From the NCBI RefSeq assembly GCF_006345805.1, contig NC_043006.1:59520001-59584000 (forward strand): a stretch of DNA of 64,000 bases, given 5' to 3'. The translations under genes and the position numbers were made by a program. Below are positions 5,870 through 57,054 of the stretch, piece after piece; position 1 is the stretch's first letter; the number at the start of each line of letters is the position of its first letter. The notes under the pieces are model-generated. The model saw nothing but the letters and a program-made list of their open reading frames with translations, ran no database searches and was not told where the DNA came from. The stretch comes from Octopus sinensis. Its lineage: Eukaryota.

Positions 5870-6030
5870 AATTTTGCATGAAGAACTGGAAAACATTAAT
5901 TCTCGGCATTGACACTACGAATATAAATGCTGGACAGCTCAATATTAATTGTGGGATCTTTCAAGGAGACCCATTATCTCCGTTATTCTGCTTAGCACAG
6001 TTTCATCCAAGTGATAGCATCATAATGGAA
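5870..6030 (+). pseudogene. Short non-LTR reverse transcriptase fragment (RLE-clade-like)
   Basis: ORF 5833-6048 contains GIFQGDPLSPLFCLA, similar to the RT at 23105-23620. Confidence 0.65.
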
Positions 6031-6219
6031 TGTAGGCTTGACAAATGAGCCAAGCTTACGTCTATAACAAGGGAAAACTATCAAGCACATACTGCATCTT
6101 CCTGGGCAGAGACATCGAGATAAAAGAATTAGAACACTAGGGAAGTAATAAGTATCTATGAGCATTTTAAGGAGATGGGATTAAACCCTCAGAATAGACT
6201 AAACAATAGGAAACTTCTC

Positions 6220-7100
6220 TTGAAAATGAACAAAATTTCGCATCGTGGTGTTATCGAGCATCTGCAGAAAAAGGATTAGACTCCTAAGGATATTCATGCT
6301 GATATGGTTGCTACATTAGGGGATGACACTCCAGCTTTATCAACTGTGCAAAAGTGGAAAGCTAAATTTAGGAGGGGAAGGAAGAGTCCATAAACTTACC
6401 TAAGGTCTGGAGTCCTGAAACCACCATCACCGAGGAAACCATTGATCATGTTAACCACATGATGATGGATGGTAGGCGATTGGCAGTAAATCAAATAGTC
6501 AATGTTATAAGCATATCCTAAGGTTTCTGCTCGGTGGGTGCCACATCTTCTGATGCCCGATGATGAAAAGCGCACCAGGCTGGTCACAATACAGGAAAGC
6601 CGGACATTATTTGAGGCAGATCCACCTGGCTTCCTTGAACGTTTCATAAGCCAGGATGAGTGTTAGTTTCATCACTTTGAGTCAGAGACAACGAAACAAT
6701 CCATGCAGTGGAAACACCCCTCCTTATCTACTCCAAATAAGGCCACGGTCGTTTCATCTGCAGGGAAGTTGACGGCCTCAGTTTTTTTTTGTATTCATTG
6801 ATTATCTTCAGAAGGTCCACGCCATCAATGGAGAGTACTATGTCAACTTACTCAGGCAGTTACAGAAGGCTATCAAGACGAAACGCCCAGGAAAATTGAC
6901 AAAACTTATCATGATTCATCAGGACAATGCTCCAGCACACAAGCCCTCGGTTTCAATCGTTGCTGTGCGTGAATGTGGCTTTGAACTAGTTCTTCACCAA
7001 TGGGATCCAAGCGCTGCAACACCGTTAGCAGAAGTCTGTATTGAAAAATAAACCTCATTTGGTCACATTCGAGGCTATGAATTTTTCAGCTGACCCTCAT
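6220..7100 (+). mobile_element. Degenerate mariner transposon (5'-truncated, many stops)
   Basis: Frames read HRGVIEHLQKK, DIHADMVATLGDDTPALSTVQKW, DECxFHHFESE, SMQWKHP and HQDNAPAH; right end ...TTTTCAGCTGACCCTCA|TA. Confidence 0.8.
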
Positions 7101-7299
7101 AAACACTTTGGGGTGCATGCTTACATGCCACTGCATCGGAACAAAACCTCGTCGGGTTGAAAATGCTACCGAGGCCCAGGTACAAGAATAAACAATAGTA
7201 CAAACTGTTAACACAAAGCACCAAAGACTCATACATACACCGAATCACGACGTAGTGCTACCGTTGTTGTCGCATACATGTTTCAATGTTCTTATAACA

Positions 7300-7690
7300 A
7301 AAAGACGCTAATAGCAAAAGGAACCGACGTACAAAACGTCAAGAATATCTCACACAAAATATGCAGAGTCGCTTGCAACAATTCCTAAAAGACGAACGAA
7401 TGTGGGCTCTATTCGTGAGAAACGTTTTTCCTTGATGAAACTTCAGCCCTGAGTGAAGGAAAGACCAAGGCTGGGCGTTGACGAAAACGAAATGGCACGT
7501 CTATTACGAAGAACTTTCCGGTCGGAAGTTACCATAGATAATTTCCAGAAGACCTTGGCCTAACAGTGCTACTGATGTGTGCTACTGGTTCGGGACATAC
7601 TTTACAGGCGCGGATGTGCTATCATATGAGCTTATCTGAGATGTGCACAGATCGACGAAATAGTTCTGCGCACACTCGTTCAATGTCTTA
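7300..7690 (+). pseudogene. L1/Tx1-clade LINE 3' fragment (zinc-knuckle region)
   Basis: Translates LLVRDILYRRG...RCAQIDEIVLRTLVQC; homologous to 62820-62950. Confidence 0.55.
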
Positions 7691-12105: not shown

Positions 12106-13713
12106 TGACGGCCAAAATGTTCGGAACGGCATTGTTTTCGTCAGAAAAGTAGATATAATTTTTTATCAAAGTCGTTCTATATTCTATAATTTTCACAGAC
12201 AATAAATGCAATATTATTTGTTATTGCCTGAGATTTTGGTGTAATTTGAGAGGATAATACAAAAGTTATGGATGATTTAGTGATTTACTGCAAAACCCAT
12301 GGCGGCCAAAATGATCAGAACGGTGTTTTAGTATATTTAACCGGCGAACTCTAATGTTTTTAATTTGTTTACGTGACGGTTCGTTTACTAAACATTAGTA
12401 ACAATATTTGCAGTGTACTTTGTTAATATAATGCCACTTACTCCGTTACCAATTCGTCAGCAGATTATTAAGCTTCGAAGGAAGGATAATTTAAGTATTG
12501 GATCTATTGCAAAGATTGTTAACAAGTCATAAAGTGTTGTACACGGTACTCTTAAGGTCTACGATGATTGTGGTTCGTGTGAAGCAAGAAAGTTTACAGG
12601 TAGGCCAAGAAAAACGACCAAGAGAGAAGATTGTGCTATGGTAAAGTTGGTTAAAAAGGACAGATTTAAAACTGCTGCTGCTGTTTCTCAGAAAATGAGC
12701 ATTGTATTGAAGAAAACTTTATCTCGAAAAACTGTCTCGTCGTTTAGTTGAACATGACCTACAAGCAAGAGCACCTGCAGTGAAGCCACTGATCAGCTCC
12801 AAGAATAAAAAGTGTCGTCTTACATTTGCAACCAAACATCTGTTGTCATCTAAGAAAAATGGCAAACGGTGCATTTCAGTGATGAATCTAAGTTTATGTT
12901 ATTTGGCTCAGATGGGAAAAGGTACGTTCGTAGAAAAGTAGGTGAAAAATTGTCGCTTAAATGCCTTAAGACTAGTGTTAAATTTGGTGGAGGAAGTGTC
13001 ATGGTTTGGGGGATGATATCTGGAGATGGTGTGGGCCCTTTGGTGCGATTACATGGAAAGGTAAATGCAGGAGTTTATAAACAACTTGTAAAAGATTATG
13101 TCTTGCCTGTGCTGAGAAATTCAACTAAGCGGCCACCCATATTCATGCAGGACAATGCCCCATGTCACAAGGCTAAGATGGTCATGAACTTCCTCAAGGC
13201 TGAAAAGGTTATTGTTATGGATTGGCCTGCTCAAAGCCCAGATCTCAATCCTATTGAAAATCTATGGAATATTCTAGGAGAAAGTTCGAAAGCCAGAAAT
13301 CCTCAAACAACTGAGCAATTATGGAATGCCCTTCAGGAAGAATGGAATAAGATCACCCAGAAGAAATTGAAAATTTAATTTCCTCATGCAGTCGAAGATG
13401 TCAGAGTGTGATTGAAGCAAAAGGGCTTCACACTAAATATTAAATAATTCCAGTATTCTCTGTCATTTTTGATTATTTTGTTATTTTTTCAACCGTTCTG
13501 ATCATTTTGGCCGCCATTGGTTTTGCAGTAAATCACTAAATCATCCATAACTTTTGTATTATCCTCTCAAATTACACGAAAATCTCAGACAGTAACAATT
13601 AATATTGCATTTATTGTCTGTGAAAATTATAGAATATAAAACAACTTTGATAAAAAATTATACTTACTTTTCTGACGAAAAGAATGCCGTTCTGAACATT
13701 TTGGCCGCCACTG
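12103..13713 (+). mobile_element. Full-length Tc1 transposon with about 220-bp IR/DR-type TIRs
   Basis: TA|CAGTG...CACTG|TA; TIRs 12103-12325 and 13492-13713, each containing two copies of GGCCAAAATG(T/A)TC(G/A)GAACGG; 1611 bp. Confidence 0.93.
12431..13441 (+). pseudogene. Tc1 DD34E transposase (frameshifted; catalytic domain open at 12869-13378)
   Basis: FSDESKF, MQDNAPCH and SPDLNPIENLW, with 34 residues between the second D and E; the N-terminal HTH region has stops and frameshifts. Confidence 0.9.
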
Positions 13714-21749: not shown

Positions 21750-24700
21750 TCAGTAGTTTTATTTTTATAGCGTGCTTTCACTTCATTACCGAGCACAGCT
21801 CTGTGTGCCTTGGGTATGTGCTGTGATTTGTTGTGATGCTCTGATGTTATTGTATGGAAAGTGTTCTGCGTAGGATGTGTGCAGTGCCTAGTGGTGCAAT
21901 TTTCTGTATGTTATATGTGTTTGTAAGTCCTGGTGTTTTTGTTATGTATTTGTCTGAATATTTTTTTATCATGCCTAATGCACCTACTATGATAGGAATT
22001 GTTTCTGTTTTCAGATTCCACATTCTAGTTACCTCTATTTCCAGGTCTTTGTATTTTGAGAGTTTCTCCATTTCTTTTAGAGACACGTTGTCATCAGCCG
22101 GTATTGATACATCAATTAGAAAGCATTTTTTTTCTTCATGATCTCTGACAACTATATCTGGTCTGTTGGCCTTAATTTCTCTATCTGTGTGTATCGGCAT
22201 ATCCCAGAGTATGGTTGCTTTCTCGTTTTCTGTGACCATATTCTGCAGTTACTTGTAATATTTCTTTTCATTACATGTTTTTGGTAATTTCTGGTGGGCA
22301 GGCTTTGGTCTTGTGCTGCAATTAAAAATCCCTCTGTTTCTGCTTTGAGTCCTGAGCTTCTCAACCATTGCTGGGATTTTTCTTTGTCTATTTCTTTTGC
22401 GTTTAGTTTAGTCCAGTATTTACCATGAAGGGGCTTTTCTTGCCATCGTTTTATCATGGTTCGTTGCTGTTCTATTTTTAGTTTGGATTTCATTTGTTTT
22501 ATAGCTTTTGTTGTTTCTTCATCTTCTTCTTCTTCTTCTTCTTCTTCTTCATGTTTATTAGGTGGTATGATTTCTTGTTTGTATTTGTCAGCTTCCTTAA
22601 ATACTGAGAACAGTTTTTTATTTTGCTCGTGTTTTGCCGCTATCTGGATCAGTTTTCCTTCCTTCTGAAGTAGATATTTTTGCAGTCCTATGGTGGTTAT
22701 TTTATAGTAGTTTTCCAGCTGTATAAGGCCTCTACCACCTTCTATACGTTGTATATATAGTCTTTCTATGTCAGATTTTGGGTGATGCATCCTAGATCCT
22801 GTCATTATTTTTCTTGCTTTCCTATCTATTTTGGTCAGTTCATTTCGTGTCTAGTTAAGGATATTGTAGCTGTAACTTATAACTGGGACAGCTAAAGTGT
22901 TGATACCTATTATCTTGTTTTTAGCATTGAGCTCTGTGTTTAGTATTGATCTAACTCGTCTATAATATTCTTTTTTTATTTTCTCTTTCATTTGTGTGTG
23001 TTGTGTCTTATCTAGTTCATGGATTCCTAAGTATTTGTAAGTTTGGCTTTGGTCTAATTCTTTTATTTCATTGGTTTTATCTAGTGTGATGTTGTTACTC
23101 TTAACTAGTTTCCTCTTTTCAGGGTTACTTTGGCGCATTTTTCTAATCCAAATTTCATATCTATTTCTTTGGTAAATCCATGAACTGTCTTTAATAGTGT
23201 TTCCAGCTGTTTGTCATTTGCAGCGTATAGTTTTAGGTCATCCATATATAAAAGGTGGCTGATCATTTTGCCGTAACATTTATATCCGCATCCAGTTCTA
23301 TTTAGCATATCAGATAGAGGTGACAGTGCCAAGCAGAAAAGGAGTGGAGAGAGCGTGTCTCCCTGGAATATTCTTCTTCTAATGAGGATGTCTTTGGTTT
23401 TCATGAGTCCCTCTTTTGTTTGGAGGTGTAGGACTGTTTGCCATTTATTCATAGAGTGCTCTATGAATTTTATGATTGTTGGTGCTACTTTGTTAATGGC
23501 TAGTGTTTCGAGGATCCATGTGTGGGGGATGCTATCAAACGCCTTTTTGTAGTCAATCCAGGCCATACTGAGGCCTTTCTTCTTTCTGTGGCTGTCTTCA
23601 GTTATGGCTTTATTAATCATTAGTTGATCTTTACAGCGATATGAGCCTTTGCGGCATCCTTTCTGCTCTTCTGGGAACAGTTTGTTTTCGTCCAGGCTTG
23701 TTCAGCCTTTGTGATATCACTGCAGTAAATGCCTTGAACATAGTAGGGCAGGTTATTGGTCTGTAGTTTTCTGGTTTTTCTGTTTCATTTGATTTGGGAA
23801 TTAAGATGGTTTTCCCCTTCGTGAGCCATTCAGGCATTGTCTCTGGCTCTGCTAGTACGTTGTTAAAGTTTTCAGCCAGCTTTTTGTGCATTCCTGTTAG
23901 ATATTTCAACCAGAAGTTGGGGATCTTGTCATGCCCAGGTGCCTTCCAGTTGCTTAGTCTTTGCAGTGCCTGGGTGACCTCTTCAGTTGTTATGGGGGTC
24001 CAAAGTTGTTCAGATGCCGAGTTTGTTATTCTGATACTCCTTTTTTTGGTGGTTCGTTCGCCGACCATATTTCTCCCCAGAATTCTTCCAATTCTTCTGC
24101 CGTTGGTGCTGCAGTGACTTCTATTTTATTTTTCCCCAGTTCTTGGTAGAACTTTTTGGGGTTGGAGTTGAACTTTTTGTTTTCTTCAAAGAAGCGTTGG
24201 CGTTTCTTGTACCGGCGGATCCTTTGTGCTTTGGCAAGGATATCTTGCTTCAGCTTTTCTTTTATTTCAGGCAAATCTTTCTCTGTGATGTTATATTTGC
24301 GGAGTATTTTTGTTCTCTTTTTGTTGCTCAGTAGCGTTGATTGTTTGCTGATTTCATTAAGAATCGACAGGTCTTTTCTAATTGTCTTTATTTTGTTTTG
24401 GATGTTATTTATCCACAGGGTTGTTTGGTGGTGGTACTCCTTGTTTGGGCGGGTTTGGGTGAGTATCCAGCTTCTTTTGTGGCTGCAGTGGCTGCTGCGT
24501 ATATTAGGTTATTTAGCTCAGTGATATCACTTTTTTTTTTATTCAGTGGCTATCAGTTCAGTGACGGCTAGGTTTATGCTGTTTATAATAGGTGTTGTTA
24601 TTTTGTTTATTTTGATTCTTGGGAGGTATGGTCGGTGGTCCATTTTGAGCTCTGTGGTTTTCAGTTCTTTGATTATTTTATTTTTTATATTATCATAATC

Positions 24701-25335
24701 ATTAGGCTCCCCTTCGTTGTTTACATCGTGTTTGTTGGGAATGTTGCGTTTGTCTTCGTGTTTTACAGTTTCAGTGTTTATATTATTGGGCATTGTTGTG
24801 TGGCTTCTATCTACATTTTCCTGGTGTATGTTTTCTTTTAGGTGTTCTATTTCTATTTCTGATATTTTTTTTGTGTTGAGAATGTATCTTCGTACGTTAG
24901 CTAATTGATTAGGGTTCATTGCTGTATCCAAGTATATATCTCTATTATTTTCCTTCTATATTTTATATGTATGTGTTGTATTTTCATTTTTTGGGTAGAG
25001 TACTGCTGTGAAGTATGCGTGTAAGATAGAAATGTATTCCTCACGTGTCCATTTACGTCTTTTGGGTTTTATTTGCAGGACATGAGGTACAACGTCCGGC
25101 CCATTATTTTGACGGTCGTCATTTTCGTAGGGTACCGGTCCGTTTATTTCTGTTGTCACATTATTTCGCACGTGTAGTTTTTCGTACATTTTTTGTTGTA
25201 AGTTTAATGTACGTACCGCTCGATTGTTATTCTTGGGTTGAATAGTATCGGTGGCATTTAATTTCTTCGTAGTTCCTTTGTACATGGTGTTTGGGGTCGG
25301 AGATGATCGTGATGTTCCACGCATGTTTATATGTG
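21750..25335 (-). mobile_element. Near full-length R4/Dong-like non-LTR retrotransposon (RT plus restriction-like endonuclease), frameshifted
   Basis: Consecutive minus ORFs give RRKWTREE (N-terminal), NWKAPGHD, PENYRPITC, WIDYKKAFDSIPH, IFQGDTLSPLLF, LYMDDLKLYA, a partial Cys knuckle and the RLE motif RPDIVV...DVSIP...EKLSKYKDL; (TAA)n at both ends. Confidence 0.92.
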
Positions 25336-25469: not shown

Positions 25470-27295
25470 TATGACATTCTTGATATCGGATCACAAACAC
25501 TTTCTTTAGATATCGGGGACCTTTCTTACAATCCTTACTGTTCTCAATAGATCATATTTCTGAATTAATGCAGCTCTCATAATTACACCAGTCTCATTAA
25601 AGAAACTGTTAAATCTGTTGGTAACGGTACATACGGCACCTATCACAACTGAGATTACTTTTTGAAACCCTCCTCAGTCGTCGTATTTCCTCGTCAAATT
25701 ATGATGTTTTCCTATTTTCTGTCCTTTGACCATTACATTGATGCCTGTAGATATAGTCACATCTAAGATGGTGCACTCTTTTTCCCCTTGTAAGAATCAT
25801 AATATCTGATCGCCTTGATTGAATTTCGCAGTCAGTCTGATCATTAAAATCATATAAAACCTTACACTGGTCGTTTTCTATTTCACTTTTCGGTTGATGT
25901 TGGTAGTATTTTCTTTCTACTTTAAATCCTCTTTGCCATAATATGACCCGTTGCAATATCTTGGTCACACAGTCGTGTCTGCGTCTATATTTTTTCTGTG
26001 CCAAATGAATTTCCCTTTCTTATTACAAGCCATACACTTCGCATTTTTCGCGGATTTGTCTATTTTTGCCAGGCTTTGTGCGGTTATTATGAGTTCTTCC
26101 GTTTCTTTCGTAAGGTCTCCATTCTTCAGCCATAACCAAGACTCCTCTGCTGCGACATCCAGCGTTTGTCTGAGATGGTGACCGTGTAGTTCTTTTCTCC
26201 AGATATTTCTTTCCCGCTCCTGTTTGCTTCTTTTTTTGTATTTCGTTGTGGTCTCCACGGCTTCTTTCTCCTCTCCTCAGGCAGGTAAAATCAATCTTTC
26301 TGAGTTGCTTCGATACCGCGTTTTGCCATCTCTACACAGTTTTCTATTGGTATTAGCCTCCTCCCACCTCCTTCTATGGTAAGTATAATCTATCGACACT
26401 GTCTCTAGGATGTGGTAATCTGTACATGCACATCGTTTTCCTGGTTTTACAATCTTTTTCTCTTAGCTCTTCCTTAGACTAGTTCAAGAAAGCAGCAGGA
26501 TATCGCATTAGACAGACTGCCTATGTGTTCACTAGAGAGATTCTTTTTCCTCCATTCAGTTTTGAGCTTAGCACCCATTTTACTCTCCTGAAATATTCGT
26601 TTCTCACCCTCTCTTTCATTTCCTGACAGAAGATTCTACTTGCCTCCAATACACCTTGGTAATTGTAACAGTCATCCTCATTCATTACTCGAATCAATCA
26701 CTCATTAGGGAGTTTAATCCTTTCTGACTTGCACTTTCTACCTCTCTTTATCGCTAGCAACGTACATTTATCTATCCCAAACTCCATAACAATTCATTAC
26801 TCACAACTCTAACAGTCTGAACCAGTGAATCTAAAGCTTTCTCACTTTTAGCAAATAATTATAGGTCATCCATTTGTATCATGCTAAATTTGTAGTATGA
26901 TTTAACCTCTCCCAAGATCAGTGTAAGAGGGGTAAGAGCAACCACAAATAGCAGCAGTGAGAGTGTATCACCTTGGAATATTCCCCTACTTATGCTGATT
27001 ACACATAACTTATCTTGACCAGATGTTAGTATAGGTCTCCATTTTGGCATAATATTTTGTTAGAGCTGGACAACATTCTCAGCTATCCCAAATATACTGA
27101 GGAATTCTAGGATCCATGAGTGCGGCACACACTCATATGCCTTTTGGTAATCAGTCCACGCCGTTGCTAATATTTTCTTCTTGATTTTTACATTTCGGAG
27201 GATTTGCTGATCTATATATAATAGGTTGTTCGTCTCTTTGGGACATTTTCTTTATCCTTTCTGATCTTTTGGTAGCAGGTCACCCTCCTCAGGAT
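25470..27295 (-). mobile_element. Second, older RLE-type LINE (RT to endonuclease), heavily decayed and 5'-truncated
   Basis: TAWTDYQKAY, GIFQGDTLSLLLF, QMDDL, WLWLKNGDL, RRHDCVTKIL and VLYDF fragments; its 3' end abuts (TAA)n at 25341-25460. Confidence 0.8.
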
Positions 27296-27311: not shown

Positions 27312-27475
27312 AATAAATAGAGAATACCAAACGAGTTCCCTATGGATACCGTATTTATTACAACGAGTGGCTTGTAAACGTATCTAACTCGCTTTCGCTC
27401 GTTAGATACGTTTACAAGCCACGAGTTTTAATAAATACGGTATCCATAGGGAATGAGTTTGGTATTTTATTTATT
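27312..27475. repeat. 164-bp imperfect palindrome at the Crypton 3' end
   Basis: The arms include TTCCCTATGGATACCGTATTTATTA / TAATAAATACGGTATCCATAGGGAA and GTGGCTTGTAAACGTATCTAAC / GTTAGATACGTTTACAAGCCAC; centre TCGCTTTCGCTC. Confidence 0.95.
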
Positions 27476-27809
27476 ACACACGAATAAACGACCATATTTT
27501 ATTAATCTAATAATTAAATTCTTCACATCGTGTTGAAGCGCGCATGAATACAGCTTGATTTCACGTCAGTGACGTCACAATGTGTAACTGTAAAAGATGT
27601 CATGCCGCAGGAAGATAGTCCGACTTCATAGCGCTAAGTTTTCAGGTGAAATGACTGATAACTGATGACTGTTTAACATTTTGTTAACATTCAAGTTCAC
27701 GTTCAAGAAATACATAACACAGATTGAATCTTCAACAACTTTAATAATACTCAAACCTGTTTTCGAGTAGCAATGTCAGTCAGAGTAGAGTACAATAGTC
27801 CAGTAAAAC

Positions 27810-29374
27810 TTAACAGTCCTCATTATCTGTGAGACGAGGTCGCTTTGCATCTGAACCAAAGAAGTTCACATTGATTGTTCCCCCATATATTGGAGCCGAG
27901 AAAATGGAGAGCAATGAACCAAAGCAAGTGACAGCGTTCCGAGATTGACTCGACGTAACGTTGACGGTGGAGGGGAGTTCACTTGCACTCGCTGCTGATG
28001 TGTTTGACGGAAGTACAAGCGAACCAGACTGGTCATTGTTGCTACTAAGGATGTTACTGATGGCACGATGACGATCCATGGAAATATTGCTGTAACTATT
28101 GATGCTTTGCACATTACGATGTCCAGATATCTGCATGATTTCAGTTGGAGGAATGTTCTGGTCAGCGAGCTTCTGCACAAGGTATTTGCGTGCTGAATGG
28201 TTCGTGAATCTTCGATTGTCCAAACCAGCTGATTTAGCCATCCTTTTCATAATTGTACCTAGTTTGTTGACACCGACCGGTTGACATTTAAACCAGGGAT
28301 GAGAATGGGAGGAATCTTTGCAGTTGGTGGCCAAATAAAATGGTGAATCCGGCGATGAATAATCTGATGGTCTCAGATCAGCAAAACGCTTGTACAGGTT
28401 AACTGGACAACGCTCATCATTCGTCGCCCATGCTTTTGGGTAGATGTTACGTGCATGGTCGAGATTATCACCTTGACAAGTTTTGGACTGTCGCTCCCTA
28501 AACTGAAGGAATTCCTTGCCTTCATTGTCAACATGCAAAGAAACGTCGCCCCATCGCATGTCGTTGTGAGGTTTGACACTCCGGATACCAAAGTGAACGG
28601 TGTTGTTCCACCATAGCGTGTTGAGGATGGATGCAGGTGTGTTCGGACCGAGCTGGTCACATTCCCATAGCTTGTTGATATCGTCGTCGGAGAGAGATTC
28701 CGCGCGTCGAGGTAGGTTTCCCATTCCTTCACTTTTCAACAGCTTTTGCTTTGTTTTTAGTACGTCATGTAGTTTCACGAATAGTCACGAGAATAGTGAC
28801 GTCGAGTAGTGTTTTGACTTCAGATATCTTTCAATACTGGATAACATTCCCCTCAAAGATGAAGGTTCATAGTTGCTACCGTCCGGCTTTCGTAACGAGA
28901 TAAAGAAAGTACACAGAATGTCACAAAGTTCGCTTTTGTCGATAGATTCAATTGGACGCGTGTCGCCATTTGTCGCCATGAAAGCAAACAATCGTTTAAC
29001 ATCATAGCTTGTTTTCCGAAGAGTGTTTTTATTTTGATTACCTTGAACGAATTTATCTATTCCAGAATGATCATACCTCGGTTGAAATTCAAGTTCATTA
29101 TGGCTATCATCAAAGAAATCGTCACGAAGAAGATCATTGTACACCTCATCAGGGATGTTAAATGTAGGGTTCGATGACAATCCACTCGTCGATGACACTG
29201 TTTCAGGTACCTTTGTTAACCTGTATCCAGCAACATGTCGAACTTGGCCAGTATTGATCTTCACATTGAACATTCTGTATGTTCCAAGAGGTTGAACAAC
29301 GGATAACACTCTTCCCCATCATTACCATCAATCTTAACAAAATCATTCACCTTGATATCGACAACAGTAGCCAT
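27810..29374 (-). pseudogene. Crypton-type (DUF3504-like) tyrosine recombinase, about 520 aa when reconstructed
   Basis: Catalytic set HFGIR(R), SK(K)T, NH(H)SAR(R)K, SGH(H)RN, NSY(Y)S, plus FFISLRKPDGSNYEPSSL in the core-binding region. ORFs 28785-29309 and 27810-28778 are in the same frame, split by one TGA (28787-28785); one 1-nt frameshift near 29310 joins the MATVVDIK start at 29374. Confidence 0.88.
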
Positions 29375-29759
29375 CTTGTTGATAGATCTACCTGCACTGC
29401 TAGAGTATCGACGAGCAGACGATATATGTTGTGATTTTTTTGGCAACAAAAATTTGAATTACGACCAGAAATGTTTATATTTTATGTGTATATGACTTTA
29501 AGTGATATCTGGTATAAAAAAGATAGTATGTTTGTTTAATTACATGGCTACATTCTACCTGCTCGTGAAAGTTTAGTTGTAACTTATGAATGACAAAAGT
29601 AGTGCCGTCACCGTGACCTCGGGTCATCACCATGGATTGACCAATCAGAAGCAGCGCTCGCAATGTTAGATACCAAAAATATCTCAAAGTGTTCTCACTC
29701 ACATGTGTGTGATAACACCTGTTAGCAACTTCCATGCCAGTGGAAGGCGAGTTATTGGT

Positions 29760-29950
29760 CGGTAGTTTCTGTATCTTACGTTTGTCCTCGTGTTTTACAG
29801 TCTCAGTGCTTAGGATATTATTTGGCATTGCTCTGCGGTTACAATCTACGTTTTCCTGAAGTATTTTTTTCCTTTTAAGCGTTCTATTTATATTTCTGAT
29901 AATTTTTTTGTTTTGAGAATATATCTCCATAAGTTAGCTACTTTCTTAGG
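29760..29950 (-). pseudogene. Diverged fragment of the R4/Dong-like ORF N-terminal region
   Basis: Aligns with 24720-24910 (NNILSTETVKHEDKRKI vs NNINTETVKHEDKRNI). Confidence 0.7.
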
Positions 29951-30268
29951 GTTTCCAGTTTCCAGTTGGTAATGCGCGCATTATTGATGTTCTTACTGAT
30001 ATGTCATTTCGGTTAATTTAGTCTAAGTGATTTGTGTTGTGCTGTCCAGATTAACACTTCAAACTTTTATATTTGATTTTAGCATTTACACCAATGTTCG
30101 TTGCTTATCCAAACCGTTGCTCATATCTCCGACAATCTCCCCCCATACATTATTTTCCACTCCATTATGTGTCTTTTTCTTCCATTTCCATTTTACCTAC
30201 ATTCACAGATATCAATTCACTCGGCAGTCTACATCATAGCTGAAGCTCTGCACCAATCAAACAATTGT

Positions 30269-30592
30269 GGTCGACTTTGCCTTTCATCCTTTCGGGGTCG
30301 ATAAATTAAGTACCAGTTACGCACTGGGGTCGATGTAATCGACTTAATCCGTTTGTCTGTTCTTGTTTGTCCCCTCTATGTTTAGCCCCTTGTGGGTAAT
30401 AAAGAAATAGGTATTTCGTCTGCCGCTACGTTCTGAGTTCAAATTCCGCCGAGGTCGACTTTGCCTTTCATCCTTTCGGGATCGATTAAATAAGTACCAG
30501 TCACGCACTGGAATCGATATAATCGACTTAATCCCTTTGTCTGTCCCTGTTTGTCCCCTCTATGTTTAAACCCCTGTGGGCAATAAAAAAAT
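30269..30592 (+). mobile_element. Tandem dimer of the tail-less Meta-like SINE body
   Basis: Junction AAAGAAATAG|GTATTTCGTC at 30410/30411, the same as the junctions in the 33538 array. Confidence 0.9.
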
Positions 30593-31349
30593 ATAAAATT
30601 GACAACGCTAGTAAAAATACACTATTTAAAACCAAAGTTCTAATGATTCTGTTACTCCCTCTGCGCCTGTCTGAAACACCTAACTCACTGTTTCCTTTCC
30701 CAATTATATTCTCTATCCAGGCATAGATCTGGAGAAGCTTCAACTTAACACCAACAACAATGGTTTTATTCATGTGAAAGCGTTTACAGAAACCGTTCAT
30801 GTTTTCCCTCATCTCCGAATTATAAAACTGATACAACATAGGTTATATTTTGTTTTTTGTCTTTCTGTTTGTGCGTGTGTTCCTCTTTTTTTCTATGAGC
30901 CAGCGTGGGAGTTTTTTGTGCGGTTACTCAATCTGTCAGAATAGCAGCCAAATCTGCATCAAACCGACTTATAGAAAAGAAGTGTTCAAATATGTAGTCC
31001 TTTACTATTGTGTCAGTAAAAAAAAAAAAAAGAAAGAAAAATAAATAAAAGAAACACTGTTAATCACGGCACTCCCTCTATCAGGGTTCACCACGACTAA
31101 ACAAACTATTGTGATATACACACACGTATTGTGGTGGATTTTAAGAGCAAATTTTCAACTATGTTGGTGAAAAGGCCACAAGATGTGAAGAGGGAGGCAA
31201 ATGTGGTTTCAGACATGAAACTGAGTAGGGCGGGACTAACATACATCTTTGTAAGATTTCTTCTTTTTTTTTTTTTCTTAGTCAAAGAAAGGATGGGGGT
31301 CTCTGAGACTGCAATGAGAACAGACGGGAGATCTGATACCGAATGTGTC

Positions 31350-33055: not shown

Positions 33056-33537
33056 CATATATGAGTACAGGACGTCACCAACTGTGTAAACAACATGAAG
33101 TACATATGTTAACAGCGAGAGAGAGAAAATGGAAAACAGGACAAGTAACACGGAGAACGACCCTTCATCAGTAGTCAGCTGTCTTTCTGCTTCTCATTTC
33201 GAGCATTCAACGACAATATGAGTCTTCGAAGACAGTTGCTCCCAAAAATGCCAAAATAAAATTTTGGGCTTATGGAGGATCAAAGTTGAGAACAAAAACA
33301 GGGCAATGGAGACATAGAGAGATGACCTGCTTTGTGCCTTCCTGCTACATTCCATTTATCAGTTTTCACTATGACTCTCAATCTGCTAGTAACTGCTGCT
33401 GAGTCTCTCCTTACAAGCATACACAAACACTCACAGAGAACACGCACATAAAATGCAATGGATAATGTGGTGTAATGTAACACCAAGATTCCCTCGCGAG
33501 GAGAGAAACACGATGGAAAGAGCACGACTGGGATACC

Positions 33538-35043
33538 TATTTCTTTACTACCCACAAGGGGCTAAACACAGAGGGGACAAACAAGGACAGACAAACAGAT
33601 TAAGCCGATTATATCGTCCCCAGTGCGTAACTGGTACTTAATTTATCGACCCCGAAAGGATGAAAGCCAAAGTTGACCTCGGTGGAATTTGAACTCAGAA
33701 CGTAGCGGCGGACGAAATACCTATTTCTTTACTATCCACAAGGGGCTTAACACAGAGGGGACAAACAAGGACAGACAAACGGATTAAGCCGATTATATCG
33801 CCCCAGTGCGTAACTGGTACTTAATTTATCGACCCCGAAAGGATGAAAGCAAAGTTGACCTCGGTGGAATTTGAAGTCAGAAGGTAGCGGCGGACGAAAT
33901 ACCTATTTCTTTACTACCCACAAGGGGGTAAACACAGAGGGGACAAACAAGGACAGACATACGGATTGAGCCGATTACATCGAACCCAGTGCGAAACTGG
34001 TACTTAATTTATCGACCCCGAAAGGATGAAAGGCAAAGTCGACCTCGGCGGAATTTGAACTCAGAACGTAGCGGCGGACGAAATACCTATTTCTTTACTA
34101 CCCACAAGGGGCTAAACACAGAGGGGACAAACAAGGACAGACAAACAGATTAAGCCGATTATATCGACCCCAGTGCGTAACTGGTACTTAATTTATCGAC
34201 CCCGAAAGGATGAAAGCAAAGTTGACCTCGGTGGAATTTGAACTCAGAACGTAGCGGCGGACGAAATACCTATTTCTTTACAACCGACAAGGGGCTAAAC
34301 ACAGAGGGGACAAACAAGGACAGACAAACAGATTAAGCCGATTATATCGACCCCAGTGCGTAACTGGTACTTAATTTATCGACCCCGAAAGGATGAAAGC
34401 AAAGTTGACCTCGGCGGAATTTGAACTCAGAACGTAACGGCAGACGAAATACCTATTTCTTTACTACCCACAAGGGGCTAAACACAGAGGGGACAAACAA
34501 GGACAGACAAACGGATTGAGCCGATTACATCGACCCCAGTGCGTAACTGGTACTCAATTTATCGACCCCGAAAGGATGAAAGGCAAAGTCGACCTCGGCG
34601 GAATTTGAACTCAGAACGTAGCGGCGGACGAAATACCTATTTCTTTACTACCCACAAGGGGCCAAACACAGAGGGGACAAACAAGGACTGACAAACGGAT
34701 TAAGCCGATTATATCGTCCCAGTGCGTAACTGGTACTTAATTTATCGACCCCGAAAGGATGAAAGCAAAGTTGACCTCGGCGGAATTTGAACTCAGAACG
34801 TAACGGCAGACGAAATACCTACTTCTTTACTACCCACAAGGGGCTAAACACAGAGGGGACAAACAAGGACAGACAAACGGATTAAGCCGATTATATCGAC
34901 CCCATTGCGTAACTGGTACTTAATTTATCGATCCCGAAAAAATGAAAGGCAAAGTCGACCTCGACGGAATTTGAACTCAGAACGTAACGCAGACGAAATA
35001 CCGCCAAGTATCTCGCTCGGCGTGGTAACGTTTTTGCCAGCTC
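33538..35043 (-). repeat. Tandem array of 8 SINE-body units (182-184 bp each) with one SINE head
   Basis: Units begin (plus strand) at 33538, 33722, 33904, 34088, 34271, 34454, 34638 and 34820; the last runs into the SINE 5' head at about 35000-35043. Confidence 0.95.
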
Positions 35044-51589: not shown

Positions 51590-52322
51590 CATACATACAT
51601 GCATACACATATACATACATACATACATACATACATACATACATACATACATACATACATACATACATGCATACATATACAACATACATACAACATACAT
51701 ACATACATACATACATACATACATAATGCACAAAATACACTATACATACATACATACATACATACATACATACATACATACATACATACATGCATACACA
51801 CATACATACATACATACATACATACATACATAATACATACATACATACATGCATGCATGCATACATACATACATACATACATACATACATACATACATGC
51901 ATACATACATACCATACATACATACATACATACATACATACATACATACATACATGCAGGCATGCATACATACATACATACATACATACATACATACATA
52001 ACATACATAATACAGCATACACATCTACATACATACATACATACATACATACATACATACATACATAACATACATACATACATACATGCATACATACATA
52101 CATCATACATACATACATACATACATACATACATACGTGAGGGGAGAATTCACAAAAGACGAAGACAGGTGGTGTAGACAGCAAACAGATGTATTAGTTT
52201 AACGCACGGGAATTGAAAAATTCTTTAATGTTTCAAGCCTACATACATACGTGCATACATGCATGCATGCATGCATACATACTACATACATACATACATA
52301 CATACATACATACATACATACA

Positions 52323-55726: not shown

Positions 55727-57054
55727 CACACACACACAGAGACCCGCAAACAAATAGCAAACACACATTCATGAACACCCACTTATATACATATAGATAA
55801 ACATACAGACATGAACACCATACAAACATATAGTTAGAGTGGGAACGTTCGCAGACGTACGGGCGGCGGCGGATACGTTCACACACTCACATATACATAC
55901 GCACAAACACACAAACAACAAAAAAAACACACAATCATACTTATACATAATCCTACACTCAAACACACATCCGCGCTTGCATATATGAACACCACACACA
56001 CAGAGCTTGATAAATAAATAGAGAGAGAGAGAGAGAGAGAGGGAGAGATAGATAGATAGATAGATAGATAGATAGGTAGGTAGGTAGGTAGGTAGGTAGG
56101 TAGGTAGGTAGGTAGGTAGATATAGATTGTATTCCCTCGCTCCCTCTGTCTCTCATGCCCACACCTATACATACATACATACATACATACATACATACAT
56201 ACATACATACATACATACATACATACATACGTTCGTACATACGTACGTACATACATACATACATACATACATACATACATACATACATACATACATACAT
56301 ACGTTCGTACATACATACATACATACATACATACATACATACATACATACGTACGTACATACATACGTACATACATACGTACATACATACGTACGTACAT
56401 AATACGTACGTACGTACGTAAAAATATGAGGTAGTTGGTTTTAATTGCCGCTTAGAACACTTACATTTTCTCCAGATTATAAATATATATTTGAGAGAAT
56501 GCATGAGCAACACAACGCTGTTTTCCTCTTCATTTCTCTTATCTCGTCTTCGTATTAAAATACGATCTTATTACCCTATGTAACAAATCATCCTTAACGA
56601 GTCAAAATCCCCCCTGGATTTTCACCTTCAATTCTATAATGTCATTAAGTCTGCTAATAATAATTAATGAATGATATTAATTAAAAGCTACAAACCAACA
56701 TGCATATAATATCATTAGCGTCTTCCTCTCTACGTCTAAATCTCGGTACTTATTAAAAATAAGTAATAATAATCAATATTGTACCGAATATGTTGGAGTT
56801 TATCAAACCTACAAGCTAAAGTGAGTTGATTAACATGGTTGCTATTTTGTATTTTGCATTCCAAATATAACTTAACCTAATTAAAAATTGCAATATAATT
56901 TTCTTCGGCTTATAATTTATAGCCGTCAATTTTCTCACTGAATTCATCACAAATAACCTTAGGACTCCATCAGACTCGAGGAAAGACATGTATATATATA
57001 TATATATATATGTATGTATATACAAATACATGCGCGCGAAAGCACACATGCATA

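What the first reader, a model, noticed from the sequence alone, without database searches (positions are those of the whole stretch)
27810..29374. Crypton-type tyrosine recombinase transposon, two lesions from intact
All R-K-H-R-H-Y catalytic positions are present in an intronless ORF with only one in-frame TGA and one 1-nt frameshift. The TGA lies within a short imperfect duplication CTATTC(TC)GTGA. Established: DUF3504-type YR domains come from Crypton DNA transposons and were domesticated as ZMYM2/3/4, QRICH1, KCTD1 and KIAA1958. The near-intact state and base composition unlike the flanks suggest recent activity, possibly horizontal acquisition (inference).
Basis: partly seen in the sequence, partly recalled or inferred. 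Interest (0 to 1): 0.7.

Follow-up and report, generated by a model that had tools for sequence, protein, structure and literature searches.

The report
Dead Crypton transposon copy in octopus
This is a decaying, fixed copy of a 2.4-kb Crypton "jumping gene" in an octopus genome; the copy is ordinary, but comparing it with its relatives shows how this poorly understood transposon class probably marks its own ends.

Summary
On the minus strand, 29374→27810, lies a 522-codon intronless tyrosine-recombinase ORF (Pfam DUF3504 2e-26, Phage_integrase 2e-8). All six catalytic residues are present. The ORF is broken by one 1-nt deletion in a G-run (29314-29317) and one TGA (28785-28787).

It is one copy of a 2.4-kb Crypton (CryptonA-type) family of Octopus. 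I found seven independent insertions with the same sharp ends at unrelated loci. The consensus ORF is intact and the copies decay neutrally.

- "Recent activity" does not apply to this copy. The same insertion sits at the orthologous O. vulgaris locus with different lesions, so it predates that split.
- Horizontal transfer has no support. The nearest non-Octopus relative is 62% identical, and only the coding part is GC-richer than the flanks.

There is also an unexpected result. The element ends in a ~165-nt palindrome whose outer 13-14 bp are completed only when the 3' end is joined to the 5' end. The termini share a TTTAT repeat. This layout, with compensatory changes, recurs in two other mollusc families and in many metagenome relatives. 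I found no description of it for Cryptons in the papers I could search.

The parts
27313..29716 (-). Whole Crypton copy, 2404 bp. Its limits are set by where seven independent copies stop being alike.
   Evidence: L001, L002, L003, L005, L007 and L008 align to the window only between these points (93.6-97.4% identical). The flanks are unrelated, except in the orthologue L004.
29711..29716 (-). 5' terminal hexamer GTTATC. The family has TTTATT in 6 of 7 insertions. It is followed by the conserved ACACACATGTGAGTGAG.
   Evidence: The two changes are shared with the O. vulgaris orthologue.
29375..29710 (-). 5' non-coding region. It carries a window-specific 11-nt deletion between 29663 and 29662.
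27810..29374 (-). Recombinase ORF. The family consensus has 522 intact codons without introns. The window copy is broken twice.
29208..29374 (-). Coding part for an N-terminal five-stranded small beta-barrel of about 55 aa. It is conserved across the protein family and matches no Pfam family.
   Evidence: strands 12-55, pLDDT 84-89; alignment; no Pfam match.
29314..29317 (-). Lesion 1: a G-run of 4 where every other copy has 5, giving a -1 frameshift. It is specific to the window lineage and is the kind of change a long-read assembly error could also produce.
   Evidence: alignment; 1-nt deletion in the window only.
28785..28787 (-). Lesion 2: in-frame TGA. The O. vulgaris orthologue has TCA.
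28779..28799 (-). Templated 9-nt duplication. TCACTATTC (28799-28791) was copied as T[C>G]ACTATTC (28787-28779), replacing 12 nt of the consensus (SDGTF became SSLF, later S*LF). The replacement is shared with the orthologue.
28092..28583 (-). Catalytic core, with all six codons intact: Arg 28583-28581, Lys 28484-28482, His 28199-28197, Arg 28190-28188, His 28121-28119, Tyr 28094-28092.
27318..27482 (-). 3' subterminal palindrome. The arms are 27401-27466 and 27323-27388, extending outward to 27482. Folded as single-stranded DNA it gives -68 kcal/mol, z = -18.
   Evidence: (I1: 66-nt arms, 91% complementary).
27470..27481 (-). Outer end of the left arm, GTGTGTAATAAA. It is the reverse complement of the family's 5' terminus TTTATTACACAC, so the palindrome is completed only across a 3'-to-5' junction.
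   Evidence: helix 1.
27354..27362 (+). Inner right copy of the 9-mer TTTATTACA. It reads TTTATTACA on the + strand and TGTAATAAA on the element strand. The inner left copy at 27427-27435 is mutated to TTTATTAAA on the element strand.
   Evidence: Intact family members have exactly four copies, all at the terminus or in the palindrome.
27313..27322 (-). 3' terminus CTCTA+TTTAT. TTTAT repeats the start of the 5' terminus and is the presumed crossover core.
   Evidence: The 3' pentamer is TTTAT in three insertions, TATAT or TATAC in two, and it merges into a TA repeat in one.

Best explanation
The feature is a fixed, neutrally decaying copy of an autonomous CryptonA-type DNA transposon of the Octopus vulgaris species group.

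Shown:
- The unit is 2.4 kb and holds a single intronless gene.
- That gene encodes a Cre-like two-domain tyrosine recombinase, preceded by a small N-terminal beta-barrel.
- The unit has no terminal inverted or long direct repeats.
- It begins with TTTATTACACAC and ends with ...GTATTCTCTA-TTTAT.
- It carries a ~165-nt palindrome just inside the 3' end.

Inferred mechanism:
- The recombinase excises the element as a circle by crossing over between the two TTTAT cores.
- Joining the ends extends the palindrome by 13-14 bp. This creates the fourth copy of the 9-mer TTTATTACA, arranged as two inverted pairs that I take to be recombinase-binding sites.
- The circle re-integrates by recombination between this core and AT-rich T(T/A)TA(T/C)-like targets, often TA microsatellites.

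The window copy can no longer make recombinase, because of a frameshift and a TGA, both acquired after the split from O. vulgaris. Its cis sites are also damaged.
For: Identity:
- Pfam DUF3504, Phage_integrase and a sub-threshold QRICH1 match.
- An AlphaFold model of an intact paralogue matches QRICH1, then Cre (TM 0.55-0.6 on the target), lambda Int, IntI4, XerA, Flp and XerH.
- The catalytic R, K, H, R, H and Y are intact.

Mobility:
- The 90% protein cluster holds models from seven O. vulgaris loci on six chromosomes, plus O. sinensis.
- Seven independent insertions share identical boundaries and have unrelated flanks.
- The consensus ORF is intact at 522 aa. Copies lie 0.8-3% from the consensus.
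- Substitutions on the copies are 38 synonymous to 90 non-synonymous, as expected without selection.

Age:
- The window and L004 share both junctions. So do L001 and L006, which are O. sinensis and O. vulgaris.
- All stops and frameshifts are private to one orthologue.

Termini and circle model:
- TTTAT-like pentamers sit at both ends.
- The palindrome extends 13-14 nt further across the joined ends.
- The 9-mer occurs exactly four times per element, only at the terminus and in the palindrome.
- The same layout is present in a 62%-identical family (L009/L010) and a 40%-identical family (L012-L017).
- Between the Octopus family and the 62% family the palindrome is 80% identical in DNA, against 69% for the coding region.
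- 27 of 76 pairs show compensatory double changes, against 2-6 in slid controls and 0 of 500 shuffles. Three of them lie in the junction-spanning helix.
- About 29 of 54 metagenome relatives with enough downstream DNA have a 90-175-nt palindrome after the ORF.
- In at least five of these, the reverse complement of the left arm's outer end matches 12-18 nt about 130-250 nt upstream of the ORF. Controls reach at most 10 nt.

Targets:
- Four of five independent copies of the young family, and one of seven Octopus copies, lie in (TA)n.
- One copy lies in a repeat whose intact version shows the target GGGTT(A/C)TT(C/T)TAT|ATGC, which resembles the element's own 3' end.
- One metagenome copy abuts the 5' end of a second copy head-to-tail.

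Precedent: the active CryptonF-1_cRei ends in CACCG and targets CAYCG (PMC9977147).
Against: - No circle, excision footprint or empty site was observed for this family. The paralogous LINE copy in the window does not give a clean empty site.
- The crossover position is inferred only from where copies stop being alike and from the short terminal repeat.
- The sequences on either side of the core are not inverted repeats of each other, unlike classical 11-13 bp + 6-8 bp + 11-13 bp tyrosine-recombinase sites.
- Palindrome symmetry could be kept by hairpin-templated repair rather than by selection for function.
- The copy number in the genome is unknown. I saw only copies that carried gene models.
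- No Repbase or Dfam comparison was possible.
Confidence: 0.88

Rival explanations
1. It is a domesticated, single-copy host gene of the DUF3504 group (ZMYM/QRICH1/KIAA1958-like) that recently became a pseudogene.
For: NCBI names several relatives 'zinc finger MYM-type 2-like' or 'KIAA1958 homolog'. The locus is syntenic between two Octopus species. The best solved-structure match is QRICH1.
Against: - There are seven insertions at unrelated loci with identical ends.
- The catalytic Tyr and second Arg, which all domesticated genes have lost (PMC3212892), are retained.
- No zf-MYM, BTB or other host domain is present.
- Substitutions are neutral, 38:90.
- Each orthologue carries different disabling mutations.
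Confidence: 0.02
2. It is the recombinase part of a DIRS/Ngaro-type retrotransposon; the neighbouring reverse-transcriptase fragments belong to it.
For: RT-like ORF fragments lie 250-800 bp away on the same strand (26859-27050), and an RVT_1 ORF lies at 23105-23620. The left-arm end, complementary to the joined termini, recalls the internal complementary region of DIRS (my own knowledge).
Against: - The RT fragments lie outside the unit shared by all copies.
- They belong to a LINE family that also occurs at 21.8-24.9 kb.
- The 2.4-kb unit has one ORF.
- DIRS/Ngaro recombinases do not match DUF3504 (PMC3212892), and this protein does, at 2e-26.
Confidence: 0.02
3. The family entered Octopus by recent horizontal transfer and this copy reflects recent activity.
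For: - Copies are only 0.8-3% from their consensus, and two O. vulgaris copies keep open ORFs.
- CpG observed/expected is 1.0 in the ORF, against 0.77 for the whole window.
- No other cephalopod protein appears among the top 120 hits. Transposons are usually masked before annotation, so this means little.
Against: - This insertion, and the L001/L006 insertion, predate the O. vulgaris / O. sinensis-level split.
- The nearest relative outside Octopus is 62% identical and comes from a mollusc. Nothing shows anomalously high identity.
- The GC excess is limited to coding sequence and is only about 1.3 sd.
Confidence: 0.07
4. One or both ORF lesions are assembly errors, and the copy in the animal is intact.
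For: The frameshift is a single-base loss in a 5-G homopolymer, a typical long-read error. The orthologue has GGGGG.
Against: - The TGA is a transversion in non-repetitive sequence.
- The copy also has an 11-nt deletion, a deviant terminal hexamer and a neutral excess of amino-acid changes.
- The orthologous copy is independently broken, by W257* and a ~66-nt deletion.
Confidence: 0.1

Closest known systems
[quoted passage not shown]
   Same: - A single intronless ORF encoding a tyrosine recombinase that matches DUF3504 and keeps the catalytic residues.
- No C-terminal GCR1_C domain, no RT, no TIRs or LTRs.
- Low to moderate copy number, in a mollusc host.
   Different: [quoted passage not shown] Here the family has a TTTAT-type terminal direct repeat, a conserved 3' end (GTATTCTCTAT), and a ~165-nt subterminal palindrome completed across the joined ends. 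A conserved N-terminal beta-barrel is also present, and I did not see it described.
CryptonF-1_cRei of Chlamydomonas, the first Crypton seen transposing (PMC9977147), and the Goodwin et al. 2003 model
   Same: A short terminal motif that matches the target: CACCG with target CAYCG there, TTTAT with T(T/A)TA(T/C)-like targets here. This fits site-specific recombination of a circle with a look-alike target.
   Different: It belongs to a different Crypton group (F, not A) with a different protein architecture. That paper does not mention a palindrome. For the Octopus family no transposition event has been seen.
Domesticated DUF3504 genes: QRICH1 (PDB 9hjt), ZMYM2/3/4, KCTD1, KIAA1958
   Same: Homologous core-binding-like and catalytic-like domains. 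QRICH1 is the best match by both sequence and structure.
   Different: The domesticated genes have lost the catalytic Tyr and second Arg. They are single-copy, conserved and fused to host domains. This element keeps all catalytic residues, is multicopy and decays neutrally.
Integron attC sites with IntI, and the CTX-phage attP with XerCD (my own knowledge, not tested here; IntI4 structure 2a3v is among the fold matches)
   Same: - An imperfect palindrome at the 3' end of the mobile unit.
- The crossover lies near the outer end of one arm, so a few bases of that arm start the integrated unit and the site is whole only in the circle.
- There are conserved departures from symmetry inside the stem.
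   Different: - This element is eukaryotic, and the recombinase is encoded by the mobile unit itself.
- The stem is longer (~90 bp).
- Nothing here shows that a single strand or a cruciform is the substrate. Four co-evolving duplex binding sites would give the same pattern.
Glomhoppers, fungal DUF3504-encoding CryptonA elements (PMC13465315)
   Same: A DUF3504 recombinase with intact catalytic residues, intronless copies regarded as potentially mobile, and placement in repeat-rich surroundings.
   Different: It has a fungal host. [quoted passage not shown] Here the termini are sharply defined.

Membership tests
Crypton, CryptonA group | Encodes a tyrosine recombinase with the full catalytic set (R-H-R-Y tetrad, plus Lys and second His) | tested here: met
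   R266, K299, H394, R397, H420 and Y429 of the consensus are all present in the window. They are invariant or nearly so in 34 homologues. Box II aligns with XerA and a S. aureus integrase. The fold is Cre-like.
Crypton, CryptonA group | The recombinase matches DUF3504 (PF12012), which DIRS/Ngaro recombinases do not (PMC3212892) | tested here: met
   DUF3504 E=2.3e-26, 93 bits against a cut-off of 29.7.
Crypton, CryptonA group | The recombinase is the only gene: no RT, RNase H, methyltransferase or GCR1_C domain | tested here: met
   The 2.4-kb shared unit holds one ORF. There are no other Pfam matches.
Crypton, CryptonA group | Multicopy, dispersed, with the same boundaries at unrelated loci | tested here: met
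   Seven independent insertions in O. vulgaris, O. sinensis and the window.
Crypton, CryptonA group | No TIRs or LTRs; at most a short direct repeat at the termini that is alike in all copies | tested here: met
   TTTAT(T) at the 5' end in 6 of 7 copies. TTTAT, TATAT or TATAC at the 3' end.
Crypton, CryptonA group | Clusters with reference CryptonA recombinases (Repbase) in a phylogeny | not tested
   No Repbase or Dfam sequences were available. This is supported only indirectly, by DUF3504 membership and by best hits to mollusc and cnidarian Crypton-like proteins.
Crypton, CryptonA group | Moves through an excised circular DNA | not testable with these tools
   Inferred from the palindrome that is completed only across the joined ends and from one head-to-tail junction.
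Domesticated DUF3504 host genes (ZMYM2/3/4, QRICH1, KCTD1, KIAA1958) | Loss of the catalytic Tyr and second Arg | tested here: not met
   Both are retained in the window and in the consensus.
Domesticated DUF3504 host genes (ZMYM2/3/4, QRICH1, KCTD1, KIAA1958) | Single copy under purifying selection, fused to host domains | tested here: not met
   Multicopy. Synonymous to non-synonymous changes are 38:90. Stops arose independently in the two orthologues. No host domains are present.
DIRS/Ngaro tyrosine-recombinase retrotransposons | RT/RNase H gene within the element; ITR plus internal complementary region, or split direct repeats | tested here: not met
   There is no RT in the shared unit. 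The nearby RT fragments belong to a LINE outside the boundaries.
attC-like folded recombination site (works-like comparison only) | Imperfect palindrome at the 3' end, with the crossover near the outer end of one arm, so that the site is whole only in the circle | tested here: met
   in three families. Searches show it in metagenome relatives.
attC-like folded recombination site (works-like comparison only) | The substrate is a folded single strand recognised through extrahelical bases | not testable with these tools
   Conserved asymmetries exist: a 1-nt against 3-nt loop beside the core, and ACTCGT-like words in direct orientation in both arms. Their role is unknown.

The most novel reading that the evidence does not exclude
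CryptonA transposons, thought to lack terminal structures, share a conserved recombination module. It is a 150-190-bp imperfect palindrome next to the 3' end, whose outer arm is split by integration and restored only in the excised circle. It carries four copies of a family-specific 9-mer and a conserved 3' end (GTA(A/T)TCTCTAT). This would be the long-missing cis site of animal Cryptons. Its attC-like topology, together with the conserved bulges, raises the possibility that a hairpin or cruciform is the substrate rather than plain duplex.
Probability: 0.45. Interest if true: 0.65.

Novelty: new member of a known kind. Interest (0 to 1): 0.42.

Why it matters
The copy in the window is an ordinary dead transposon and needs no special explanation.

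The value lies in what its relatives show. Cryptons are the least understood order of eukaryotic DNA transposons. Curation guides say their 'only distinguishing feature' is a few-bp terminal repeat (PMC8969392). For animal Cryptons no terminal structure at all had been reported (PMC3212892).

A sharply defined, evolutionarily co-varying junction palindrome gives three things:
- a concrete candidate recombination site that can be tested in vitro
- a way to find the true ends of single-copy Cryptons and their non-autonomous derivatives in genome annotation
- a direct prediction of the circle junction that can be looked for in long reads

It also bears on what DNA features the ancestors of the human DUF3504 genes (ZMYM2/3/4, QRICH1) once recognised.

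Tried and rejected
- Other copies in the window: tblastn and blastn find only this one.
- Empty site from the paralogous LINE copy at 24.7 kb: the 5' flank aligns to 24916-24729 and the 3' flank only weakly to 23680-23506. About 1 kb of LINE is missing between them, so no clean pre-insertion sequence can be read.
- Horizontal transfer by anomalous identity: none found. The nearest non-Octopus relative is 62% identical. I could place its source assembly (ERZ25071447) only as 'a mollusc'. The best named hits were Lottia and bivalves, with no cephalopod.
- Composition anomaly: rejected as evidence.
- Pfam identity for the N-terminal barrel: none. Only sub-threshold small-barrel hits appeared.
- Circular or tandem metagenome contigs: no contig repeats its own ends, and the 5' flanks do not match the element's own 3' end. 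Only L051 shows a head-to-tail junction, with a second, diverged copy.
- Classical recombinase core site (two inverted 11-13-bp arms around a 6-8-bp spacer) at the junction: not seen by eye. The sequences on either side of TTTAT are not inverted repeats of each other.
- Literature: no paper in the searchable library links Cryptons with a palindrome, hairpin or subterminal repeat. Repbase, Repbase Reports and Dfam could not be consulted.
Full report
**1. What is in the window**

Translating the minus strand from 29374 down to 27810 gives one long reading frame with two interruptions. The joined product, with X at each break, matches three Pfam families:
- DUF3504: E=2.3e-26, 93 bits
- Phage_integrase: 2.2e-8
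- the QRICH1 domain: below its cut-off

Its only solved relative by sequence is human QRICH1. The strand is minus.

**2. The lesions**

I aligned the window copy with six paralogous copies and one orthologous copy.

- The frameshift is the loss of one G from a run of five (window 29317-29314).
- The stop is TGA at 28787-28785.
A 9-nt copy of TCACTATTC (28799-28791) replaced 12 nt of the family sequence, in frame (SDGTF became SSLF).
- The O. vulgaris orthologue still reads TCA, so the window's TGA is a later C>G change.

Both ORF-breaking lesions are private to the window lineage. The orthologue has its own lesions, W257* and a ~66-nt deletion. The window copy also carries:
- an 11-nt deletion in the 5' non-coding part
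- about 11 amino-acid replacements
- a deviant 5' terminal hexamer
- one mutated terminal 9-mer

The homopolymer frameshift is the kind of change an assembly error could produce. This could not be checked.

**3. Catalytic residues and fold**

Arg, Lys, His-x-x-Arg, His and Tyr are all intact in the window. In consensus numbering they are R266, K299, H394, R397, H420 and Y429. They are invariant or nearly so in an alignment of 34 homologues. A profile of that alignment aligns the HxxR...GH...Y segment with the same motifs of archaeal XerA and a S. aureus integrase.

An AlphaFold2 model of an intact paralogue has mean pLDDT 75, and above 85 over most of the core. Its matches in the PDB are QRICH1, then some twenty Cre structures over both domains (TM about 0.55-0.6 on the target), then lambda Int, IntI4, XerA, Flp and XerH.

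Residues 12-55 form a five-stranded small beta-barrel. It is conserved across the family and matches no Pfam model.

The Glu that usually follows the first Arg is Pro in this clade.

**4. It is a transposon family, not a gene**

The best database hit is an O. sinensis protein at 93% identity. Its 90% cluster holds ten O. vulgaris gene models from seven loci on six chromosomes, most of them split by stops. I fetched eight of these loci.

- All copies align to the window only between about 29716 and 27313, at 93.6-97.4% identity. The flanks are unrelated.
- The majority consensus has an open 522-codon ORF.
- Copies lie 0.8-3.0% from the consensus; the window copy is at 1.3%.
- Copy-specific substitutions in the ORF are 38 synonymous to 90 non-synonymous, the neutral expectation.
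- The unit contains nothing but the recombinase gene.
- The RT-like fragments beside it belong to a LINE that also occurs at 21.8-24.9 kb, and they lie outside the shared unit.

These features, together with the DUF3504 match that DIRS/Ngaro recombinases lack (PMC3212892), place it among the animal Cryptons (CryptonA). They exclude a domesticated DUF3504 gene, since all of those have lost the catalytic Tyr and second Arg (PMC3212892).

**5. Age and origin**

L004 (O. vulgaris OX597822.1, 52.87-52.89 Mb) is collinear with the window over more than 20 kb. It carries the same insertion with identical junctions. The window therefore comes from a close relative of that assembly. O. sinensis is likely but not proven.

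A second insertion, L001 in O. sinensis and L006 in O. vulgaris, is likewise orthologous, with flanks 98.3% identical. Orthologous copies differ by 0.9-1.6%, and each is 0.8-1.4% from the consensus. The insertions therefore predate the split by a modest margin, roughly 1.7 times its age if rates are equal.

This copy is fixed and old on the scale of the species pair. It does not show 'recent activity', although two O. vulgaris copies still have open frames.

For horizontal transfer I found no positive evidence:
- The nearest protein outside Octopus is 62% identical. It comes from ENA assembly ERZ25071447, which I could place only as a mollusc.
- Named relatives are gastropods and bivalves at 40-57%, and a coral at 45%.
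- The GC excess (43% against 38 ± 4%) is limited to the ORF, while the element's non-coding parts are at host level.

**6. The ends of the element**

In element orientation, six of seven insertions begin TTTATT-ACACACATGTGAGTGAG; the window has GTTATC. All end ...(G/A)GTATT(C/G)TCTA followed by TTTAT, TATAT, TATAC or a TA repeat. There is therefore a TTTAT-like direct repeat, no TIR, and an AT-rich target.

This fits the model of Goodwin and of Kojima & Jurka, in which a circle recombines with a look-alike target. It also fits the one Crypton seen moving, which ends in CACCG and targets CAYCG (PMC9977147).

**7. An unexpected structure**

Just inside the 3' end lies a long palindrome. In the window its arms are 27401-27466 and 27323-27388, at 91% complementarity. 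Folded as single-stranded DNA it gives -68 kcal/mol, z = -18.

The left arm runs 13-14 nt further out than the right arm. That extra stretch (GTGTGTAATAAA, window 27481-27470) is the exact reverse complement of the element's 5' terminus (TTTATTACACAC). Joining the 3' end to the 5' end therefore lengthens the palindrome, whereas real 3' flanks generally do not.

The 9-mer TTTATTACA occurs exactly four times in an intact copy: at the 5' terminus, at the left-arm outer end, and once in each arm. It occurs nowhere else in 2.4 kb.

**8. The structure is conserved with covariation**

Two further families from the mollusc assembly ERZ25071447 have the same layout.

- The first is 62% identical in protein (L009, L010/L011).
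- The second is 40% identical (L012-L017). It has five independent copies that are 99.9% identical with an intact 513-aa ORF, so it is probably active now.
- Their 5' ends are TTTCTTACACACC and TTTATTACATAAC.
- Their 3' ends are GTATTCTCTAT and GATTCTCTATATA.
- In each, the left-arm outer end is complementary to that family's own 5' end.

Between the Octopus family and the 62% family, the palindrome is 80% identical in DNA. That is more than the coding region at 69%, and the other non-coding DNA does not align at all.

An alignment of the joined-end palindromes of the three families gives 76 pairs:
- 93% of cells are paired.
- 27 pairs have compensatory double changes, against 2-6 when the partner is slid by 1-3 columns and 0 of 500 shuffles.
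- Three of these lie in the 14-pair helix that exists only across the junction.

Three departures from symmetry are shared by all three families. One is a 1-nt against 3-nt loop beside the core. The other two are places where both arms read ACTC(G/A)T in the same orientation.

**9. It extends beyond molluscs' close relatives**

A scan of metagenome contigs returned 80 loci encoding relatives.

- Of 54 with at least 250 nt after the ORF, about 29 have a 90-175-nt palindrome there (scores 67-233, against at most 50 for shuffles).
- About 20 of 26 readable ones end in (T/C)CTCTAT or (A/T)TCTAT(A/T)T, counted by eye. The narrower automatic pattern hit 14 of 26, against a background of 0.04 per 50 nt.
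- In at least five loci (L019, L020, L026, L051, L094), the reverse complement of the left arm's outer extension matches 12-18 nt located about 130-250 nt upstream of the ORF. Controls reach at most 10 nt.
- The terminal words differ completely between these families (for example TTATAAGTACTGAGATTT), but the symmetry is kept.
- One contig shows the 3' end of a copy abutting the 5' end of a second, ~85%-identical copy.

**10. Targets**

- Four of five independent insertions of the young family, and one of seven Octopus insertions, lie in (TA)n.
- L009 lies inside a ~330-bp repeat whose uninterrupted copy gives the target ...GGGTT(A/C)TT(C/T)TAT|ATGCACC. This resembles the element's own 3' end, GTATTCTCTAT.
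- In the window and in L001, the 3' flank (TTGCAAAC, TTCACAC) loosely resembles the element's TTACACAC. I treat this as suggestive only.

**11. Mechanism, with levels of support**

Shown:
- one gene for a Cre-like recombinase with a full active site in the consensus
- sharp ends with a short direct repeat
- a palindrome completed only across joined ends
- four co-evolving 9-mers
- AT-rich targets

Inferred:
- excision as a circle by crossover between the terminal TTTAT cores
- binding of recombinase protomers to the 9-mers
- integration by crossover between the junction core and T(T/A)TA(T/C)-like sites

Speculative: the substrate may be a hairpin or cruciform rather than plain duplex. The topology (a palindrome at the 3' end, with the crossover near the outer end of one arm) and the conserved bulges recall integron attC sites and the CTX-phage attP. 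That comparison rests on my own knowledge, not on a test here. Four duplex binding sites co-evolving with their protein would explain the motif covariation equally well. It explains the whole-arm symmetry less well.

**12. What is new and what is not**

A Crypton in a mollusc is known (Lottia; PMC3212892). An Octopus family is at most a new member, and it may already be in Repbase or Dfam, which I could not consult.

The terminal architecture appears undescribed in the literature I could search:
- Kojima & Jurka found 'no terminal repeats in animal Cryptons'.
- The 2022 curation guide gives a short terminal direct repeat as the only hallmark (PMC8969392).
- The 2026 Glomhopper study reports poorly conserved termini (PMC13465315).
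- No paper links Cryptons to palindromes or hairpins.

**13. Verdict**

The finding itself is real and correctly classified, but it is ordinary: a fixed, dead transposon copy with no sign of recent acquisition. The comparative by-product, a candidate recombination site for CryptonA, is the part worth following up.

Noticed in passing
L012-L017 (ENA assembly ERZ25071447, a mollusc): A third Crypton family has five independent insertions that are 99.9% identical, each with an intact 513-aa ORF. Four of the five lie in (TA)n microsatellites. It is probably active today and would be the best system for testing the circle model.
   Followed up: partly
L014:5977-7603: Next to one full copy lie two further pieces. 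One is an inverted 3' fragment sharing the same TA repeat (5977-6467). The other is a ~1-kb internally deleted, non-autonomous derivative that keeps about 500 bp of the 5' end and about 470 bp of the 3' end (6598-7603).
   Followed up: partly
L051:2370-2724 (metagenome contig Ga0209567_10025283): There is a head-to-tail junction: the 3' end of one Crypton copy is followed directly by the 5' end of a second, ~85%-identical copy (...CCTCTATTTAT|CACATAACCTACGG...).
   Followed up: partly
alignment A2, columns 19/165-167, 30-32/152-154, 62-63/121-122: All three families share the same mismatched islands inside the palindrome. In two of them both arms read ACTC(G/A)T in the same orientation. These could be strand-marking bulges or separate binding words. 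They remain unexplained.
   Followed up: no
window 29208-29374 (minus strand) and the N-termini of homologues: A conserved ~55-aa five-stranded beta-barrel sits at the N-terminus of the recombinase (consensus V.D.V.IDGKG.G.V...Y.V.......RL). It matches no Pfam family. In the fold search, only one low-ranked hit of matching length appeared (YorP, 2heq; 81 aligned columns); I did not check that it maps to this domain.
   Followed up: partly
window 21847-24931 (minus strand), 26859-27050 and 29716-29953: A non-LTR retrotransposon with an RVT_1 domain lies at 21.8-24.9 kb. Fragments of the same family flank the Crypton on both sides, but about 1 kb of LINE sequence is missing between them.
   Followed up: partly
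window 33533-35002 and 30269-30593: A 183-bp satellite is present as 8 tandem units plus 2 more units 3 kb away. The array is longer in the orthologous O. vulgaris locus (L004), so it changed size since the two lineages split.
   Followed up: no
window 12869-13378 (+): A fragment of a Tc1/mariner-type DDE transposase (Pfam DDE_3, 1.7e-16).
   Followed up: no
window 28779-28799 (minus strand): The in-frame 9-for-12-nt replacement is an exact copy of the sequence 12 nt upstream. This is a template-switch type of mutation, shared by the window and O. vulgaris and therefore older than their split.
   Followed up: yes
window 51590-52136 and 56167-56417: Long (CATA)n and (ATAC)n arrays create spurious long ORFs on both strands.
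   Followed up: no
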